NCBI GenBank assembly: GCA_030704615.1
Contig: CM060732.1
Location: 57,350,001 to 57,414,000, forward strand
Direction: 5' to 3'
Origin: Takakia lepidozioides
Taxonomy: Eukaryota; Plantae; Bryophyta
Length of the DNA stretch: 64,000 nucleotides
Positions within the stretch are counted from its first letter, which is position 1, and every line of letters begins with the position of its first letter. The notes beneath the pieces were generated by a model. The model did not search any database. It worked only from the letters and a program-made list of their open reading frames with translations, and had not been told where the DNA came from. The position numbers and the translations under genes are program-made. Positions 54,462 to 64,000 of the stretch are shown in pieces.

Positions 54462-56420
54462 ATGGCGCACAGGCTGTTGCGGGATGTGGAAGCGGATGGG
54501 TGGGAGCGTTCGGATTTTCCCATCATCTGCGAGTCGTGCCTGGGTGATAACCCGTACGTGCGCATGGTATGTCGAGTTCCACGCTCTTTGTGGATTTTAC
54601 AGTGAAGCCTTATGTGATCAATTTTGCTGTGGTCTTGTTGGGATTTGGGTTGGCACAGACGAAGGCGAATTTTGACAAGGAGTGCAAGATATGTACGCGG
54701 CCTTTTACGGTGTTCCGGTGGAGACCTGGACGGGATGCTCGATACAAGAAATCAGAGGTGTGCCAGACGTGTAGCAAGCTGAAAAATGTTTGTCAGGTCT
54801 GCTTGCTTGATCTTGAATATGGCCTTCCCGTTCAAGTGAGAGACACTGCCCTCGGCATCAGCACAAGTGATGCAATCCCAAAGAGCGACGTCAACCGCGA
54901 GTACTTTGCGGAAGAGCAGGATCGCAAGGTACCCCCTGCCCTCGCCCTTATCTCTCCTTTGCACGTTGTTAACCTCCCTCTTTGACTGAACAAGGTGGTC
55001 ACAGCCACAAAAGGAAACTGATAGCTGACATCGAGGAGTGCATGTCTGTCTCAAAGAAGTGCAAATATAGGCAATTACGTACCTTTGGGAAGTACAGTAG
55101 CAGTGTTGGAATCATGCTTCTGGTTGTAATGTTTGCTCTCCTCAGACTGCAGTCTTGCAGGGTAATTGCAGGGTAAGACGCTTAACGAGATTGTTTGCAC
55201 AAAAAGTTCAGAGAAGTCTTCAGATGTATTCTTGGAGCACTCTTTAACCTAACATGATGTATTCAATATGAATTTCCCAGGCAAGAGCAGGTTTGGACTA
55301 TGAATCTTCGTTTGGAAAGGCACGGCCAAATGACACAATTCTGAAGCTTCAACGGACTACACCCTATTACAAGAGAAATCGTGCACATATTTGCAGTTTC
55401 TATGTAAGGGGTGAGTGCACCCGTGGAGCTGAGTGCCCTTATCGCCATGAAATGCCTGTCACAGGGGAGCTGTCTCAACAAAACATCAGGGACCGCTACT
55501 ACGGGTACGAAGTCGTTTTTCTTCTGGTATAGTAAAGATAGTAGATTCAGAAAAACTATGTACTAAACGTTGTTGTTCTAAACGTCAATGGCTGCCTCTA
55601 AAACTATTCATTCTAATGTGCACATTTGGATTGCTTCAGGGTAAACGATCCAGTGGCAGCAAAGCTATTGAGGAAGGCTGGTGACATGCCCTCTTTGGTA
55701 CCACCTGAGGATATGAACATCAGGACACTCTATGTGGGGGGACTTGATGCCCGTGTCTCAGAAGAGGATCTCAAGGACCAGTTTTACAGTTATGGGGAGA
55801 TTGAGTCAATCCGAATGGTGCCACAACGTGCATGTGCATTTGTCACCTACACCAGCAGGGAAGGTGCTGACAAGGCTGCTGACAATCTAGCCAACAAGCT
55901 GGTTATCAAAGGCTTGAGGTTGAAGCTTATGTGGGGGAAACCCCAGGTTGCAAAAACTGAACTTGAGGGAGCGGCTGAAGGAGAAGATAATGCAAAAGAG
56001 AACCTTGGAAGCGGAATTCTATCTCGTACAGGAATGCTTCCACGAGCAGTTATCTCCCAGCAACAACAACAGCATCAGCAAGTTGCTGGCCAAGATCAAG
56101 CTCCACTCAACTATTTCAACTTACCTCCGCCACCGCCCCCATCTCAGAGGCCCTTCTATCCATCAATGGACCCACAACGAATGGGAGCAGTTGCTCCAGG
56201 CCAAGAGTCAAATGCCAACTCTGGTCAAGGTGAGGGTTCAAACCCTGGCCAACCAGGCCAGCCTTCAAATTTTGGTGGCCCTCCCATGGGGCCTCCTCCA
56301 TATGGGTATGTTCCATATCCGCAGCCCCGAGGACCCCCTTCTCATCTGTACCCACACTATCCCCCTCCCCCCTTCCAACCTGGACCTCCACCACAGCAGT
56401 ATTACCATTCTCAGTACTGA
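54462..56420 (+). CDS. RBM22: Pre-mRNA splicing factor RBM22/Cwc2/Slt11-like CCCH-RRM protein; exons 54462-54566, 54659-54928, 55281-55504, 55640-56420
   Basis: [66 protein letters not shown], and a Pro-rich tail. Confidence 0.95.
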
Positions 56421-56825
56421 GGGATCATCCGGCATGTCGAAGAATGGTCCTCCACAGATGCAAACCACTACAAGCATGGACTGAATATGACGAAATCGTG
56501 AATGAGCATTCGTGCAGTCTATGTGACAGGCTCCAGGGATTTCCTCTGCCACCTGTTCCACCAAGAGCAGGTGGTGTCTGAGAGACAAACAACTCAGTGT
56601 TGCAATACAAGTTAGCACATGGATTCCATAGCAGGTCTTGCCAATAGGCAAAGAAGGCATGATGGGAGACTATCTCGTACGGTCCGGAGAGCACTTAGTA
56701 GGCGTGTAGGTGAAGTTTACTGTAGGCTGCATCAGCCCTGTTATAGCTGGTAACCTAAGCTGGCAGGTTTCTGAAACTGGAACTTAGGGCAGGCACATTC
56801 AACTAACACTTCTTCAGCTGCTGGC

Positions 56826-56975
56826 AAGCAACTCTTCCTTGCAGGCAGATTCCTTACAGATATGTGTGAGTTGATCATTTAAAAATGTTTTATCAGTACC
56901 AAGCAACTCTTCCTTGCAGGCAGATTCTTTACAGATATGTGTGAATTGATCATTTAAAAATGTTTTATCAGTACC
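56826..56975. repeat. 75-bp tandem duplication
   Basis: 56826-56900 versus 56901-56975, 2 mismatches. Confidence 0.95.
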
Positions 56976-57063
56976 CTTTGGGATTTAGTCTGTTCTACGT
57001 GCTAGAGGGACGAGTGAGAGTAGCCTATGGAAAAATACTACTGTGTATCCGAGATTTTCTTGT

Positions 57064-57200
57064 CCTAATAACTAGGGAGAGCCCTCTCAACGTGAGTACC
57101 AAAACCCACCGTTGTGCATCATCGCAGAGAGGGTTTGCACCCTCACCCGCTCAGCGTGGACTGCCTGTTACTATGGCAGTCTTAATGAGATGTGTGGCCG
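57064..57200 (-). ncRNA. Candidate Fanzor omegaRNA scaffold
   Basis: A dense run of stems starts right after the Fanzor stop: gactgcc/ggcagtc, gagggt/accctc, caacg-tgggt/actcacgttg, gagag/ctctc, ccta/tagg. The position matches known TnpB/Fanzor loci. Confidence 0.6.
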
Positions 57201-60200
57201 GGCACGCCCCTCTCCCGCCTCTCCACCCTGCAGAATGCCGGGTGGCGAGGCTGGGAGTCCCGCATTTCCAAGAACCTGTGCATGATGTTGACCGCCGCGT
57301 TGACGTCACGGTTCCATGTAGTCCGATAGCAGGCTGTGTTGGGACACAGTCGGACCGCGTATGAGCCGCGACGCCCAGTCTTTCCCGGGAATCAGCATTG
57401 GGGCATGGCCTCCATCCTCTCGCTGCAACCGCAGCATAGTTGGCTGGTTCGAAACTCGTCCACCATCACCACCTCGCCCGCCTTCTCCCGTATCTTCTTC
57501 TACAGCTTGGAGGTTGGTGTGCTCTCCGTCCCGGGGCTGTTGTGCGCGAAAGAGGCGTCCCCGAAGGCCACCACCGTCGTCGGGTCGTTCGCCGTCACCT
57601 CCCTCGCGAGCGTCGCGTAGGCCCATTCCGTCTTTATCCATGTCGCCCACCTCAGCTCCCTCATCCTCTTGTTCACCACGTAGAACTCGTTCAGTGCCCG
57701 GAGATGTGTCAGCACCGACGCCGCATACAGGCTATACCCCGCTACAGTCGCCACCTTAGCGGAGACGGTGTTGAGCCTCGAATTGAACTGCGTCACGGCT
57801 TCGTTCCAGGCCGTCCACCTCTTCGTCAGCTTGGCCCGCCGCCGGTACCCACACATGGTGTAGAACCACGCCTTGCTGCAGCGGATCACTTGGAACCGGT
57901 CTTTTTTGTCCACCCACGGCTCGTTCAGCGCGGCCTCTGCCTTGGGCGAGTACACCACTCCCAGGTAGAGGTACTTTCGGCCGGGGTCGATGGCCACGAC
58001 TCGTTTCGGCAATGGCACGTGGGTGTGCGGAGTCGGTTTGGGCATCTCCTTTTTCTTGCGTCCTTTCACCTGCGAAAAACGACGACACCAACGTCCGTTT
58101 AAGAAACAGGTATGAAGCTTTTACTTCAATACATTTCCCGAACAAAAAGAGAATCTCTCGGGTATGCCAACGCCTTAAATGGGGTCTTTCACCAATACAA
58201 GGTTGCGGCGTCTGGAGGCACTTAACCACACATGTTTGCAGGGGGCATATATGATCATAAACCATTCTGCTGTAGCAACAGATCATGTTGCCATGTTTTT
58301 AACCTTCAGCTAAAACCGATTTTCGATTCATGGAAACGTCACATAAACAACTCATGTAAAGCGACGAGCCTCGCTTTCGGGTTCTGCAAGGAGGGTGGAG
58401 ATACCGCCTTCCTAGCCCTTGACGTTGCACATAATAAGACGATGCTGGTCGTCCAACAAGTTCACCCGCATTTGCGTCAGGAGCCGGTACGCCCGATCAC
58501 TAAAGGCAATAAAAAGCAAACATGGCGAATGAAGCAGTTGTCTTACTCTGGCTGTGACTGTAGGTTGGCGTCGGGGCGAGCCCAACAGCACGCTGACTGC
58601 AACCCCGTCGGTTGTTATAAAATTCTGAAACGTGAGTCCTCTTCCAGGTCGTTCAAACTTCCGGTCGATTTTGAAAAAGCTGTTCCACCCCAACACAATC
58701 CACAATTAGTAAAACGAAATGAACACGAGCTTGGGGCATATGTCAGCAATGGATACGACAACAAAGGGAGCACGAGTGACCTCCCGTCGTTCCGCACGTG
58801 CGGCATACATGTGCTGACCGCATACATGTGCTGACCGCTGGTTCATCCTCTAGTACCCTCATCCTCTCCCCCTCCCCGCGAAAGAAAACAAGGAGGATGC
58901 GGGGGCAAACTTACAATCTCCACAGTTCGTCGTCGCTCAAGCTTTCTAGACCGGGATGATTATGCACTATCGGGGTTGCCTTTGTCGCGAACGACCACAG
59001 GATGGTGTTGGTGATGGCTAACTGGACTGGCCTGACGCGCTTTTGTGGTAGGAGTGAGAAGAGCCGGAGCCCTTTGAGCTTCCTCACACACGTCGGGCGC
59101 CGTCTCGGATGCAGCCTCCCGGCGTTGGCCATATCCTCGTGGTATGCACCGAGGTCTTGCAGGATTTTCCATGTTGTTGCGAGGTAGTCCTGTTTCTTTA
59201 GGTCGAGCGGCAACAGTTCTCCAGGAAGAAGGTTGGTTCTCATGAGGTGGCATATGTGGACCAGACTCTCAATCTGTCCGGCATCTATGTCGCGGAGCGT
59301 GGTGTACCGCGCCTTGCACGCATGAATCGACGCATCCGCGGATCCCTGCTCGTGGGCAAGTGCGGCCGTAATCACCAAAGAGACGGCGACGCGGACGTTT
59401 TTGGCGTGGAAGGAAATAGCGGATTTGGACAGCATCATTCTTGCCCATTTCTTGAGTCGAGGAACCAAATTGACCGCGAGGGAGGTCTTGAAGTTGTCGT
59501 GCATCTCATCGGCTAGCATGCCAGTGAGGTGAGTCCAGTGAGGCTTGCGCATCGATTTCGTGTATCCTGCCGGCCGGAGCAGCTTGAACCGAACATATGA
59601 TGTGATGATTTCGGGGTCCTTGTTTTGGGGGAGCCTCCCGTCGATCAGGACGGCGCACACTGCCCGGTTGAAAAACGTCGACTTGCGTTGTAAGCCGTCG
59701 GGGAGGGCCAGTCCTTCTGCAAGACACCGCATGATATGGTACGACGCAAACAGGGATGCTTCCACAGCCAGCTGTGTCAATTCCTCCACGACTTTTCTCA
59801 TGGCGTCCCTCAGGCAGAAGCTTTTGCCAAAGCTGACCTTCACCGATATGTAGTCAAGGGCCTCCCTTTTGACGGCGCGTTGTTGTCTCCTTTGGCCCGA
59901 AGCCGTCGATGGTGCGGTCGGCTGAGGACTTGCTTGGCCGTTGGATATGCTGTTGCGCTCGCCGGATGGAGGAACCGCCGTCTCAGGCATATGTTGGTGG
60001 CAGACCGTCGTTGATGGCCGGTTCGCAGAGCACCGTTTCCTAGAGGAATCGGTCTCACCAGTTTCAGACTCGGCTGGACGTTTCCTGCTGTCCCTTGAAA
60101 TATCAACTTCCGTCGGACTGGACAGATTGGGACTGTCTTCGATTTTTTGTCGTTTCTTTCCCAATAACTTCTGTCTCGATAATTTGCTGCAATCCGCGGA

Positions 60201-60398
60201 CGTCAATGAAGCATCGTTTGACGGCAAATTTTGAAACTGATCCGCATCGTCGGATTCGCTGGGACATTTCCGTGTACAATGTCGTTCTAGTGTCGATGAA
60301 TTCGGTGTTCCTGTCCGACATTGGCGTGAATGCGTTGATCGATGTTTGCGTGGCGGTGTTGGATGTTGGAAAGCCAGGTGCAAACGTCAACGGAACAT
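57182..60398 (-). pseudogene. Fanzor1 (eukaryotic TnpB-derived RNA-guided endonuclease); exons 60398-58915, 58679-58547, 58069-57182 (~835 codons)
   Basis: FSLLP, ITTDGVAVSV, RuvC-I VVAIDPG, VVAFGDASF, RuvC-II VDEFRTSQLCCGC, CPNTAC, RuvC-III WNRDVNAAVNI. GT-AG introns are in phase. Stops at 60389-60387, 57502-57500 and 57394-57392. Confidence 0.93.
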
Positions 60399-60708
60399 CG
60401 CGTGGCAGCGGATTTTGAATCCTCCTGGTAGAGGATCACTTCCTCATGATGGGGAATCCAATTCTGTATACATATCAAAAAAAATTATTTTCAAAAACCA
60501 AAAAAAAAAAAAAAAAAAAAAACAATGTTGAAATGTTTGGAAATGGAGCATCAATCACTATTGAAAAAAAAAAAAGATCATGAATGACTCAACTGTTCAG
60601 CCGATACTCGCTATATCGATCAATATTTCCGTCGAGAGCTCTTCAAAATTAATCAACTAATAAATCCTATCAATCCTACCTTTCTACATAGGCCCACTCC
60701 TAATTACC

Positions 60709-61482
60709 CTACAGCACCCCAACACTGGCACTAAGTCCTCGGTCTATTACTGCCTTGTCCAGGCGATCGGCTCGATTGGCGATCCACCCTCCAGCCGCTG
60801 GGAGTTGATGAAATCCGTGTAGGTAAAAACAACCTAAAGTTTGAAATAGTTCAGCAAATGCCTTAGACATGTGACCATCTGTCAATTGCACCAGGCCATA
60901 TCCAGCAGAACGGACAGGACGGGGAGGAGACCCTGTACAAACTCCAGAAATAGTGACACTGAGCGAATAACACCAAGGCTAAACACATAGGTATTCGATT
61001 GACGAAACGCCTCTGGACGACGAGGCATTCCACCCTATCGCCGGATACACCAACGGGAATACATGGATCCGATGAACTACGTCGTGCACCGGGTAGGGAA
61101 AGGTAAACCGTTGAAATAAATTTAACATTTTATTATATAAAACAATAAGACAAATATTTATTATAAATGCTTCGTCCTACCCATAGAAAAACATATATAT
61201 ATATATATTCGAATAATATTTCTAAAATAAATAAATTATTAATAACGGAAAAAAATGAACGACGTGTTCAGCCAACACAAACTCAGGAGCTGGGAAACCA
61301 CCGTGTGCATCCAACGATCCACCGTCCACTGATACATTCGAGGTGGACACATCCGACGGTTTGTAAACGACGATGATCACTCCTTCCAAAACAACGTTGT
61401 TTATAAATACCTTGACCATCCTCGAAACGGCGTCATAAGAAACAACGTCGTCGTCGTCCGAGGTGCTCCATGGACGGCGCAT
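60709..61482 (-). pseudogene. Putative BAH-like domain coding segment interrupted by an AT-rich insertion
   Basis: Removing ~61092-61245 gives SRMVKVF..VYKPSDV..GGFPAPEFVLAEHVVHFFPVHDVVHRIHVF, which resembles the BAH consensus by eye. Confidence 0.4.
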
Positions 61483-62711
61483 AGTTCATGGAATTAGCGC
61501 ACATATTTGCAATCGTCGAGTTGTCACACGTCCATACTACGCAACGACAGTGAGGATAGCACATTGACGCCGAATGTCACCGTGCACAAACACCATCGCG
61601 TTAAAAAAACGCAAAGCGTAGGAATGTCAGACGGCGGCTCCCGTGGACTCGAGCGACTCCGATTTTCAAAGACCACCGCCACGCAACCAACGGTCAGAGC
61701 CTCCACGCAAACGTCAGACAGTGACACCGAAGAGAACAAAAGTACAATGGCACAACACACCGGCATGTCCCAGCGAATCCGTCGCCTCGGATCAAGGTAA
61801 TATCTAGCGAAGCCTGCAAATTTCCTAGGAAATCCTCTATCTCTGCCCTACTCATCTGCTTGTCGTATTTTTATTTTATTATTATTATTTTCCCTCTCTC
61901 TCTCTCTTTCTTATCAATTCCCTGCTACTGCCCGTAGCGGCCGCGCTCCAGTGGCTACGTAGTACGTCTCAACTTTGATTCCGGAGAAATGGTTGATGCT
62001 TTAGGGTATGTAGATTTGCTCATAACTTTGGTCTCTTCGTATTTCTCTGAGTTGTATGTTGATATTCACTCATTGAAGGGTCGTTGAAACTGAATATACG
62101 TCCAAGTATATGCATGATCCACCAGTGGCCATGATCACGGAGGTGTGTAGATTTACTGGGCGATTTACTTGGATTTATGTCGCTTAGGGATGGCGTGCAA
62201 GCGGTGGAAAGCATTTCCAGCAACTCCGAATTTATTTATTTTTTATTTTTTTCCCGTTTGTGTGTGCAACCAACTCACGTCGTCCTTCTATGTAACGCGC
62301 ACTAATACGTTGCGCAATGACTTTGCAGACAATGAACGCGCGAGAAACACGTCGTGCGGCAGAGTGAAAAAAAAAATAACTGTATGCATCAATATTGAAA
62401 TTGCTGAGTCGATTCCACAGTTTGGTTGACTATAAACATACAAAGTGGATTATACAAAGTGTGATGTCCCCATGTTGTGGGGCACGGAAACCTCCCCTTG
62501 TTTATGCTTTAGAGAAAGAAGAATGGGAGAAAATTTGTAAAGAAAGAAGAAGAAAAAAACTGTATGGATCTGGATACAGACCCTGTGCTAGCGCCGGGAT
62601 CGCAAGTCCTGAAAAAAACAAAGAAAAAAAATGACTACATGAAGAACGACGAGAAGCGCCGGTCCTTGCACAAGACATTTCCCACCAATACTGATGTGTA
62701 ACTAGAACCGC

Positions 62712-64000
62712 CTAGTTTCTTCGAACGTCCAGCGGGACGAACGGTCTCGGATTTCTGAAACTCGGTTTCCCCTTTTTCTTTGCCGAATGTTGGCAACCGG
62801 GACGTTGAATGTTTACCACGTTAGATCGATCCAGGGGTGGACGTGCTCTGACCATTGCAAAAATCTCCAACGGGACCGGCTTATCAGTCAACTGGATGAC
62901 CTCGGTCTGCACGATCCCCGTTTCCGATGCCGGAGATCCCTCCCGCATGTCGACGGACGGGCCAGCCAGCGGGAAAACCTGTCCAAATGACCGAGCCGCC
63001 GAATCTCGTGACGCGTCCTTGTACGCGCCCAAACAAACCTCTACAACCCGACATTGCAATTTCTGCAACCAACAACGACGTCCTCCGTCAACCCTCGAAT
63101 TGTTTTGTATTTTGTTTTGTTATTTTATTCTATGTCTTGAATGTATTTCCACGATGAACTATGGTTACGCGATGGTGTGGCAGTGCGTACCACCATGACG
63201 TGCGTGGCGTCCCCCCCCCCCCCCGCGAATAAATTGATAGCCGTCATCCCGGAGGCTAGGAACTGGGACAGGGCATCGCTCGTCGTCCTAAGCGGCAGCT
63301 CCTGCTCGTGCACGCGAATCCCATCCAAGTCCCGGTCGTCGTCCGCGTCCTCGTCGAGGAACACGCTCATGATCCGCGCATCGGGTTTGCCGACGACTTT
63401 GGAACGCACCACCTCCGTCGCGTCACGTCCTTCCATAATGTGGAAAACGTAGTTCAACACCTCCACTGGGTCTGTGAGCATACCGCCCCGGAACTGTTCG
63501 GCATGCCGTGCTGGCAGGTAGAACCACTGCTCCATGTGGAATCCAGGCAGGCTCCGAACGTGCGCCACCAGCATGCGCGACGTCGCAGGGTCGGCAATGA
63601 CGCAAACTACCCCCACCCTCGCCGACTGCGTGACCACCAAGAGACTGTCAAAATGCACTGACTCCCAGCGCCCGCCGCCCTTCGCGGTGCTCACGAACAC
63701 TACGGCCGCGCCCGACAGAATTGCGCCCAGGTCCAGCTGATCTAGAGAATCCACCGCCAAAACCCGGAAAGCGTCGGCTGGGGAACGGCCCGCGGCGGCC
63801 GACCCCACGCCATCCATTTTGACGGCCCGCTTCTTCAACTCCAGCAGCCTGACAAACGCCTCCGGCGCGGACTCCTTCGCCACGATCGGCTTGGCCCTTC
63901 CCGCCAGGTACGCCTTCCCCAGCGCGCCCTCCAGCTGCGCCATGTCCGCGCGGTCGAGCTGGTAACGAGCCTTCACGTCCTTCCACTCCCCCAACGTGTA
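62712..64000 (-). CDS. TE-associated protein with a degenerate beta-class N6/N4 methyltransferase-like fold (5' end outside the window)
   Basis: HEQELP..ALSQFLASGMTAINLFAGGGGDATHVMV spliced (GT near 63189, AG near 63063) to KLQCRVVEV parallels H.xKP..L...S..GD.VLDPFAGSGTT..A..LGR.FIG.E. No DPPY seen. Confidence 0.5.

What the first reader, a model, noticed from the sequence alone, without database searches (positions are those of the whole stretch)
57182..60398. Intron-containing Fanzor1 with intact RuvC triad next to a conserved land-plant gene
Seen: three in-phase exons give ~835 codons with D (IDPG), E (VDEFRTS), D (NRDVNAA) and the Cys Zn-ribbon. The only lesions found are three stops, each explicable by one C>T change in a CG or CHG context (CGA>TGA twice, CAG>TAG). 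It lies ~750 bp from the RBM22 stop, which argues against a contaminant contig. Known: Fanzors are omegaRNA-guided DNA nucleases best documented in fungi, algae, protists, molluscs and giant viruses. Inference: a recently inactivated, easily repaired embryophyte Fanzor family.
Basis: partly seen in the sequence, partly recalled or inferred. Interest (0 to 1): 0.88.

Follow-up and report, generated by a model that had tools for sequence, protein, structure and literature searches.

The report
Broken Fanzor1 gene in a bryophyte
A moss-like land-plant genome carries, just past a conserved splicing-factor gene, a complete copy of a Fanzor1 RNA-guided DNA-cutting gene that two stop codons have switched off; it belongs to a young multi-copy family, a kind of mobile gene not explicitly described in land plants in the papers I could search.

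Summary
On the minus strand at 57182-60398 lies a three-exon gene with two GT..AG introns. All five uninterrupted pieces align in order, with no gap, to a Fanzor1 profile (hhalign 96-99.9%). That profile matches solved SpuFz1 at E 9e-63.

The RuvC-I Asp, the Fanzor-type alternative Glu, the RuvC-III Asp and the four Zn-ribbon cysteines are all present. Two in-frame stops (TAG 57502, TGA 57394) break the last exon. Other copies in the same species read C at both first bases (CAG, CGA). The third stop (60389) matters only if the unverified ATG at 60398 is the start.

The neighbouring gene is a land-plant RBM22, 80% identical to Sphagnum over the exon searched. DNA contigs show several paralogs with different flanks. 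Their similarity ends about 95 nt past the stop codon (~57087), where CpG depletion also ends. Differences from one paralog lineage are mostly synonymous (10 of 14, P 0.002).

Closest relatives (41% identity at most) sit on giant-virus-like metagenome contigs. Sense transcription, splicing, an omegaRNA, the element's 5' end and an intact copy were not shown.

Verdict: a recently inactivated member of a known kind. The same scan noted other Fanzor copies elsewhere in this genome.

The parts
57087..60430 (-). Approximate extent of the repeated Fanzor1 unit. The 3' end is fairly well placed; the 5' end is only roughly placed (60290-60485).
   Evidence: Paralog contigs start matching at 57086-57094, with unlike flanks before that. 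Summed depth falls to about single copy beyond ~60430. CpG obs/exp jumps at 57087.
58915..60398 (-). Exon 1. 58917-59879 is the part homologous to Fanzor1 WED/REC. 59880-60383 is an open, unconserved, basic-cluster N-terminal extension.
   Evidence: 490-aa ORF. hhalign residues 169-489 to profile 20-308, 99.8%. AF2 model pLDDT 79, and its top five PDB folds are all Fanzor1. Basic clusters RKHR, KKRQK, RKR, RKR.
58680..58914 (-). Predicted intron 1 (235 nt, GTAAGT..CAG); a TAA overlaps the donor.
   Evidence: Profile positions 308 and 310 are joined across it.
58547..58679 (-). Exon 2, holding the TDG...VSV motif block.
   Evidence: hhalign to profile 310-347, 96%.
58070..58546 (-). Predicted intron 2 (477 nt, GTAAGA..CAG).
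   Evidence: Its lower GC (0.46) contrasts with the exons.
58115..58500 (-). Ribosomal protein S28e mRNA-like fragment inside intron 2, carrying a frameshift and a stop.
   Evidence: Weak Pfam S28e hit. Frames read. An 873-nt high-depth contig of X5/X6 is about 88% alike.
57182..58069 (-). Exon 3: the RuvC I-III motifs and the Zn ribbon, ending in TAA.
   Evidence: hhalign of its three pieces to profile 364-520, 524-553 and 559-609. tblastn with P0001 gives 38% identity.
57986..57988 (-). RuvC-I Asp codon (VAIDPGR).
57560..57562 (-). Gly at the canonical RuvC-II position (AFGD), the Fanzor-type rearrangement.
   Evidence: PMC10530073.
57455..57457 (-). Alternative catalytic Glu codon (MVDEFRT).
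   Evidence: PMC10530073.
57305..57307 (-). RuvC-III Asp codon (WNRDVNA).
57329..57436 (-). Zn ribbon CxxC...CxxxxC (TNB domain).
   Evidence: Partial Pfam PF07282 hits; cysteine codons checked.
57500..57502 (-). In-frame TAG.
   Evidence: Five paralog contigs and the X5 contig read G on the + strand at 57502, which is CAG on the minus strand.
57392..57394 (-). In-frame TGA.
   Evidence: Four paralog contigs and the X5 contig read G on the + strand at 57394, which is CGA on the minus strand.
60387..60389 (-). TGA three codons after ATG 60398; a lesion only if that ATG is the start.
57087..57290 (-). Candidate omegaRNA region: the ORF end plus about 95 nt up to the element end.
   Evidence: RNA fold -96.2 kcal/mol, z -3.2. 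The region is shared with paralogs. No Rfam match and no RNA evidence.
55293..56420 (+). Last exons of the host RBM22 gene, convergent with the Fanzor.
   Evidence: RRM_1 at 1.6e-13. Best named hit Sphagnum fallax at 80%, then gymnosperms and angiosperms.

Best explanation
This is one dead copy of a young, multi-copy Fanzor1 element in a bryophyte-type land-plant genome. It inserted tail-to-tail about 670 nt downstream of the RBM22 stop codon.

Shown: the gene encodes a complete Fanzor1, with WED/REC, a RuvC domain carrying the Fanzor-type rearranged Glu, and a Zn ribbon. It is split by two canonical introns. In this copy two C>T stops in the last exon disable it.

Inferred from the family: intact relatives are transcribed and spliced, and they bind an RNA made from the 3' end of the element. 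The scaffold would span the end of the ORF plus about 95 nt, and the guide would be read from the flank beyond 57087. With it they would cut matching DNA through the single RuvC site, which helps the element persist or spread.

The synonymous-biased divergence between copies suggests the protein was under selection while the family spread. Cytosine deamination is now eroding individual copies.
For: Family identity:
- The profile of 50 full-length relatives matches SpuFz1 (8gkh) at 9e-63, GtFz1 at 2e-49 and Parasitella Fz1 at 3e-46. Fanzor2 and TnpB match only in the Zn-ribbon/RuvC-III part.
- All five window pieces align in order to profile positions 20-609.
- The AF2 model of the N-terminal conserved part finds Fanzor1 as its top five folds, TM 0.48-0.53.
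- The catalytic and Zn residues are present, and the rearranged RuvC-II is as described in PMC10530073.

Gene structure: the splice sites are canonical and the junctions close the profile without gap.

Multi-copy family:
- 209 DNA contigs lie on the stretch, down to under 90% likeness, with differing flanks at 57087.
- C>T and G>A changes dominate (119 and 110 places, against 8-50 for each other type).
- Paralogs read C at both stop positions.
- 10 of 14 non-stop differences are synonymous, against 4.6 expected; P 0.002.

Host: RBM22 is 80% identical to Sphagnum. Overlapping contigs bridge 56400-58099.
Against: No sense-strand spliced contig was seen. The only spliced joints (58107>58562, 59140>59264) are GT..AG on the + strand, which is antisense, and probably come from RBM22 read-through.

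No omegaRNA was detected, and distant relatives share no common 3' structure. The 5' end, a target-site duplication and the carrier transposon were not found, and there is no TIR above shuffles.

No intact paralog was seen directly. The one paralog contig in a possible RNA run lacks 82 nt around the stop codon. The runs covering the locus at full identity may be the assembly's own source, so the junction is not independently confirmed.
Confidence: 0.85

Rival explanations
1. The Fanzor is the terminal gene of the much larger CpG-rich mobile island that continues to the right (ParB/methylase-like, Ulp1 and BRCA2-like cargo beyond 62700). On this reading 57087 is the left end of a compound element of about 25 kb, not the end of a separate 3.3-kb unit.
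For: CpG obs/exp is 0.94 or more from 57001 to 64000, against 0.23-0.91 to the left. The break falls at the Fanzor 3' end. A 125-nt inverted copy of the Fanzor 5' leader lies at 61674-61800. Earlier notes describe the island and Sola-like giant transposons in this genome. Bao and Jurka list Sola among Fanzor1 carriers (PMC3627910).
Against: Summed paralog depth falls to about one copy beyond ~60430, so the Fanzor unit is repeated on its own. The island's ends were not found by the earlier agent, and most of the island lies outside this window.
Confidence: 0.2
2. The block is a remnant of an integrated giant virus (Nucleocytoviricota), not a plant transposon, and the Fanzor came in as a viral gene.
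For: The closest relatives (P0008, P0011, P0014; 36-41% identity on the RuvC piece) lie on dense, intron-free contigs. Those contigs carry mRNA capping enzyme, an Rpb1-like RNA polymerase subunit or an Evr1/Alr oxidase. The tree groups the window weakly (SH-aLRT 80) with P0008. The block shows no CpG depletion.
Against: The gene has two spliceosomal-type introns and GC3 of 0.81. Several copies have different flanks. Identity to the virus-like relatives is low and the branch is long. No viral hallmark gene was seen in the visible part of the block.
Confidence: 0.1
3. The stretch is a contaminant or a chimeric join in the assembly.
For: The runs that hold the locus at full identity come from one sample, which may be the assembly's source.
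Against: Overlapping contigs run 56400-56906, 56675-57187 and 56975-58099. Runs from three studies under the same species label hold parts of the stretch. A host ribosomal-protein fragment sits inside the gene. The C>T decay spectrum and the introns also fit a resident element.
Confidence: 0.03

Closest known systems
Spizellomyces punctatus Fanzor1 (SpuFz1, PDB 8GKH; Saito et al. 2023, PMC10432273)
   Same: Full-length collinear homology through the family profile (9e-63). It is the best structural match of the window's N-terminal conserved part. Same RuvC and Zn-ribbon motifs.
   Different: Fungal and intact, with RNA-guided cleavage shown. Only about 14% identity in the structural alignment of the window's N-terminal part. 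The window copy carries two stops, and no RNA partner was shown for it.
Klebsormidium nitens Fanzor1 (KnFNuc; Jiang et al. 2023, PMC10530073)
   Same: A Fanzor1 in the streptophyte lineage, multi-copy in its genome (5 copies), with the rearranged RuvC-II glutamate.
   Different: It comes from an alga, is reported as lacking introns, and was tested biochemically. The window gene is in a land plant and has two predicted introns.
Chlamydomonas reinhardtii intron-containing Fanzor1c in Helitron2 elements (CRe-1 to 3 / CrFNuc; PMC3627910, PMC10530073)
   Same: An intron-containing, multi-copy green-lineage Fanzor1 with a conserved 3' noncoding region. Copies there are often 5'-truncated with over-represented 3' ends, and summed depth here is also highest near the 3' end.
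   Different: No Helitron ends were identified here, and the carrier transposon is unknown. No RNA partner was detected here, whereas small RNAs map to the 3' UTR of the Chlamydomonas gene.
Fanzor1 genes on giant-virus-like metagenome contigs (P0008, P0011, P0014)
   Same: Nearest sequences found, 36-41% identity on the RuvC piece, with the same domain order.
   Different: They are intron-free and sit in dense virus-like gene arrays. The relation to the window gene is distant and weakly supported.

Membership tests
Fanzor1 (eukaryotic TnpB homologue) | Full-length, collinear similarity to Fanzor1 proteins (WED/REC, RuvC, Zn ribbon), and closer to Fanzor1 than to Fanzor2 or TnpB | tested here: met
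   Pieces align to profile 20-308, 310-347, 364-520, 524-553 and 559-609. The profile matches SpuFz1 at 9e-63, against 6.6e-12 for Fanzor2 L79 and 1e-3 or weaker for TnpB. Fold search agrees.
Fanzor1 (eukaryotic TnpB homologue) | RuvC-I Asp and RuvC-III Asp | tested here: met
   D in VAIDPGR and D in WNRDVNA align with the invariant or near-invariant family columns D399 and D616.
Fanzor1 (eukaryotic TnpB homologue) | Rearranged RuvC-II: an inert residue (Gly or Pro) at the canonical Glu position, and an alternative Glu downstream (PMC10530073) | tested here: met
   Gly in AFGD (57562-57560) aligns with invariant G537. Glu in VDEFRTS lies 35 residues downstream and aligns with E571.
Fanzor1 (eukaryotic TnpB homologue) | C-terminal Zn ribbon (TNB, PF07282) | tested here: met
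   CxxC...CxxxxC is present. Both pieces give partial PF07282 hits below the cut-off, because the domain is split by a stop. 45 of 50 relatives carry PF07282.
Fanzor1 (eukaryotic TnpB homologue) | Uninterrupted reading frame (a functional gene) | tested here: not met
   TAG at 57502 and TGA at 57394 interrupt the last exon. This is a pseudogene copy of the family.
Fanzor1 (eukaryotic TnpB homologue) | Structured guide RNA (omegaRNA/fRNA) encoded at the 3' end, overlapping the ORF end and reaching the element end | tested here: inconclusive
   Paralog similarity runs about 95 nt past the stop. Fold z is -3.2. There was no Rfam match, no structure shared with distant relatives and no small-RNA data.
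Fanzor1 (eukaryotic TnpB homologue) | Residence in a transposon (defined ends, TSD or a known superfamily) | tested here: inconclusive
   The unit is multi-copy with differing flanks. However, the 5' end is not placed, no TIR rises above shuffles, and no transposase was seen in 57000-62700.
Fanzor1 (eukaryotic TnpB homologue) | RNA-guided DNA cleavage | not testable with these tools
   Needs biochemistry on an intact natural copy.
Spliced eukaryotic gene | Introns removed from sense transcripts | tested here: inconclusive
   GT..AG sites and profile continuity support both introns. The laid contigs show only antisense GT..AG joints and unspliced cover of intron 2.

The most novel reading that the evidence does not exclude
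This bryophyte harbours a still-active Fanzor1 family: at least one intact, expressed, spliced copy with its own omegaRNA. The family would have reached land plants by transfer from giant viruses and then gained introns, one of which swallowed a host RPS28 fragment. That would be a native RNA-guided DNA nuclease in a land plant.
Probability: 0.25. Interest if true: 0.7.

Novelty: new member of a known kind. Interest (0 to 1): 0.45.

Why it matters
Fanzors are the eukaryotic RNA-guided nucleases, with proven activity in proteins from fungi, molluscs, a giant virus and a streptophyte alga. The papers I could search speak of 'plants' or 'Streptophyta' only in general terms. None describes a Fanzor in a moss, liverwort or other land plant.

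A young, multi-copy, intron-bearing family in a bryophyte would extend the range to embryophytes. It would offer a natural case for studying how such genes adapt to plant nuclei, through introns, high GC3 and silencing by cytosine deamination. It also points to sister copies that may be intact.

The copy in this window is itself a pseudogene, so its value is as a pointer to the family.

Tried and rejected
- **Single-sequence searches.** Pfam and NCBIfam on the pieces gave only weak TNB/TnpB hits. Single-sequence PDB searches gave nothing useful.
- **Word-indexed protein searches.** Exon 1 found only two relatives. The 189-aa RuvC piece found none.
- **Fragment alignment.** MAFFT of the pieces against P0001 misplaced the fragments and was not used.
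- **Collection scans.** Alignment A3 was too loose for the search for related loci. The metagenome scan with the single piece found no relative. The viral-contig scan found only two distant giant-virus MAG loci, at 23-27% identity.
- **Phylogeny.** The tree places the window on a long branch with no starred clade, so no donor can be named.
- **RNA searches.** Rfam at gathering score on the whole window, Rfam by E-value on 56900-57500, and tRNA scans were all blank. The bacterial promoter/terminator scan was blank and does not apply to a eukaryote.
- **Shared 3' structure.** A consensus fold of the 3' regions of the window and four distant relatives gave no pairs.
- **Element ends.** No terminal inverted repeat or direct repeat between the two end regions rose above shuffles. 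Palindrome tags reported for the neighbouring giant transposons were not seen in 57000-64000.
- **Literature.** Supplementary tables of the two survey papers gave no species list.
- **Joined model.** The joined model was used only inside a script to count its length and stop positions.

Full report
**Anatomy.** Six-frame reading of 57000-60600 shows the coding signal on the minus strand.
- A 490-codon ORF runs 60383..58914 and ends in TAA. The TAA overlaps a GTAAGT donor at 58914.
- The frame resumes after CAG at 58680, in a 133-nt exon (58679..58547).
- A second GTAAGA donor at 58546 and a ..TTTTTCGCAG acceptor at 58070 bound a 477-nt intron.
- The last exon runs 58069..57185 to TAA 57184-57182.
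- From ATG 60398 the model has 834 codons with stops at codons 4, 729 and 765. From ATG 59990 it has 698 codons with two stops.
- Relatives are 560-740 aa long, and the start of P0001 aligns close to the second ATG.
- The 168 residues upstream of the conserved part are open and carry basic clusters, but match nothing. The start codon, and hence the third lesion, is therefore unsettled.

**Is it a Fanzor1?**
- Single-sequence searches were weak.
- Exon 1 found an intact 659-aa metagenomic protein, P0001. It is collinear with all three exons, at 38% identity over the RuvC half, and both window stops fall inside the alignment.
- An exhaustive HMMER search with P0001 gave 1923 relatives.
- A profile of 50 full-length relatives matches the solved Fanzor1 proteins over nearly its whole length: SpuFz1 9e-63, Guillardia Fz1 2e-49, Parasitella Fz1 3e-46. 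Fanzor2 (L79), TnpB and Cas12f match only the C-terminal Zn-ribbon/RuvC-III part.
- 45 of the 50 relatives carry PF07282.
- Each uninterrupted window piece, compared on its own with that profile, aligns in order and without loss. The ranges are 20-308, 310-347, 364-520, 524-553 and 559-609, with probabilities of 96-99.9%.
- An AlphaFold model of the conserved part of exon 1 (pLDDT 79, pTM 0.75) has Fanzor1 structures as its five best PDB matches, TM 0.48-0.53. The next folds score 0.1-0.2.
- The catalytic Asp/Glu/Asp and the four cysteines are in place. The canonical RuvC-II position holds Gly, with the Glu moved downstream. This is the rearrangement described for Fanzors (PMC10530073).

**The lesions and the family.** DNA contigs of the same species (run X3) lay 209 pieces on the stretch, from 99% or more down to under 90% likeness.
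- C>T and G>A changes far outnumber all others.
- At + strand 57502 and 57394, five and four paralog contigs read G. The corresponding minus-strand codons are CAG and CGA, so both stops are private or minority C>T changes.
- Paralog similarity begins at 57086-57094. The flanks before that point differ between contigs, which places the 3' end of the unit about 95 nt after the stop.
- Summed depth is highest near the 3' end and falls to about one copy beyond ~60430.
- Of 14 listed non-stop differences in exon 3, 10 are synonymous. A null matched for mutation type expects 4.6 (P 0.002), and GC3 is 0.81. The copies therefore diverged while the protein was under selection.
- These sites are the best-supported subset of those listed, and they largely reflect one paralog lineage.
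- Earlier first-stage notes of this scan list further Fanzor copies and stand-alone 3' segments elsewhere in the genome. That fits these results but is not independent evidence.

**Host and integration.** The neighbouring exon encodes the RRM and C-terminal part of RBM22. Its best named relative is Sphagnum fallax at 80% identity, followed by gymnosperm and angiosperm proteins. The host is thus a land plant, moss-like but not Sphagnum fallax itself. Its species label is coded.

Contigs at full identity overlap from 56400 to 58099 across the element end. They come from one sample, which may be the assembly's own source. CpG obs/exp is 0.23-0.91 over 1-57000 and 0.94 or more over 57001-64000. 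The break coincides with the element end. The Fanzor unit therefore opens the CpG-rich block that earlier notes describe to the right.

**Expression.** Run X1 is labelled as a guess at DNA but behaves like RNA. Its depth is about 250 on the RBM22 3' UTR, 15 on the Fanzor and 0 beyond 60432. Its two joints (58107>58562, 59140>59264) are canonical GT..AG on the + strand. That indicates antisense, spliced transcripts, plausibly RBM22 read-through.

No sense-strand joint at the predicted introns was listed, and intron 2 is covered unspliced. A 441-nt contig of a paralog in run X5 (possibly RNA) reads sense codons at both stop sites but lacks 82 nt around the stop codon.

**Mechanism.** By homology, an intact member should act as an RNA-guided double-strand DNA endonuclease that uses an RNA from its own 3' end. 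The 3' region folds better than shuffles (z -3.2). No RNA family matches it, and it shares no structure with distant relatives. No terminal inverted repeats were found, so the carrier transposon is unknown.

**Origin.** The nearest proteins (41% identity at most) lie on contigs that look like giant-virus genomes. The tree gives only weak grouping on a long branch.

**Novelty.** The searchable literature reports Fanzor1 in 'plants' (Chlorophyta, Streptophyta) and tests a Klebsormidium enzyme. No paper held describes one in bryophytes or other land plants. The finding is a new, land-plant member of a known kind, and this copy is a pseudogene.

Noticed in passing
58115-58500 (minus), inside predicted intron 2: About 80% of intron 2 is a fragment of ribosomal protein S28e mRNA (most of the coding part, then 3' UTR-like sequence). 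It carries a frameshift and a stop and is about 88% like a highly expressed 873-nt contig. At least one paralog contig shares part of it, so the capture predates this copy.
   Followed up: partly
57087 and 57001-64000: There is a sharp compositional boundary. CpG obs/exp is 0.23-0.91 left of 57000 and 0.94-1.50 from 57001 to the window end. The CpG-rich island noted by others from 62700 therefore really starts at the Fanzor 3' end.
   Followed up: partly
61674-61800 (+) versus 60235-60360 (-): A 125-nt copy (73% identity) of the Fanzor 5' region lies in the opposite orientation. It keeps an ATG reading MSQRIRR and is followed in the upstream copy by an AG|GTAAT donor-like site. It may be a shared leader or first exon of neighbouring element genes.
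   Followed up: partly
58108-58563 and 59141-59264 (+ strand): Two GT..AG joints on the + strand in run X1 indicate spliced antisense transcripts across the Fanzor, probably read-through from RBM22.
   Followed up: partly
56544-56974: A 75-nt tandem duplication lies at 56825-56974. A stretch at 56544-56831 has very high summed depth in the DNA run (737-910 against about 25 for single copy), so a high-copy repeat sits just after the RBM22 3' UTR.
   Followed up: no
L001, L002, L003: The closest Fanzor1 relatives sit on dense, intron-free contigs of up to 395 kb. Among them these carry mRNA capping enzyme, an Rpb1-like polymerase, Evr1/Alr, ATG8 and eIF-1a genes, so they look like giant-virus genomes.
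   Followed up: partly
60491-60523: A long A run on the + strand (T run upstream of the gene on the minus strand) breaks all contigs and lies close to where paralog depth ends.
   Followed up: no
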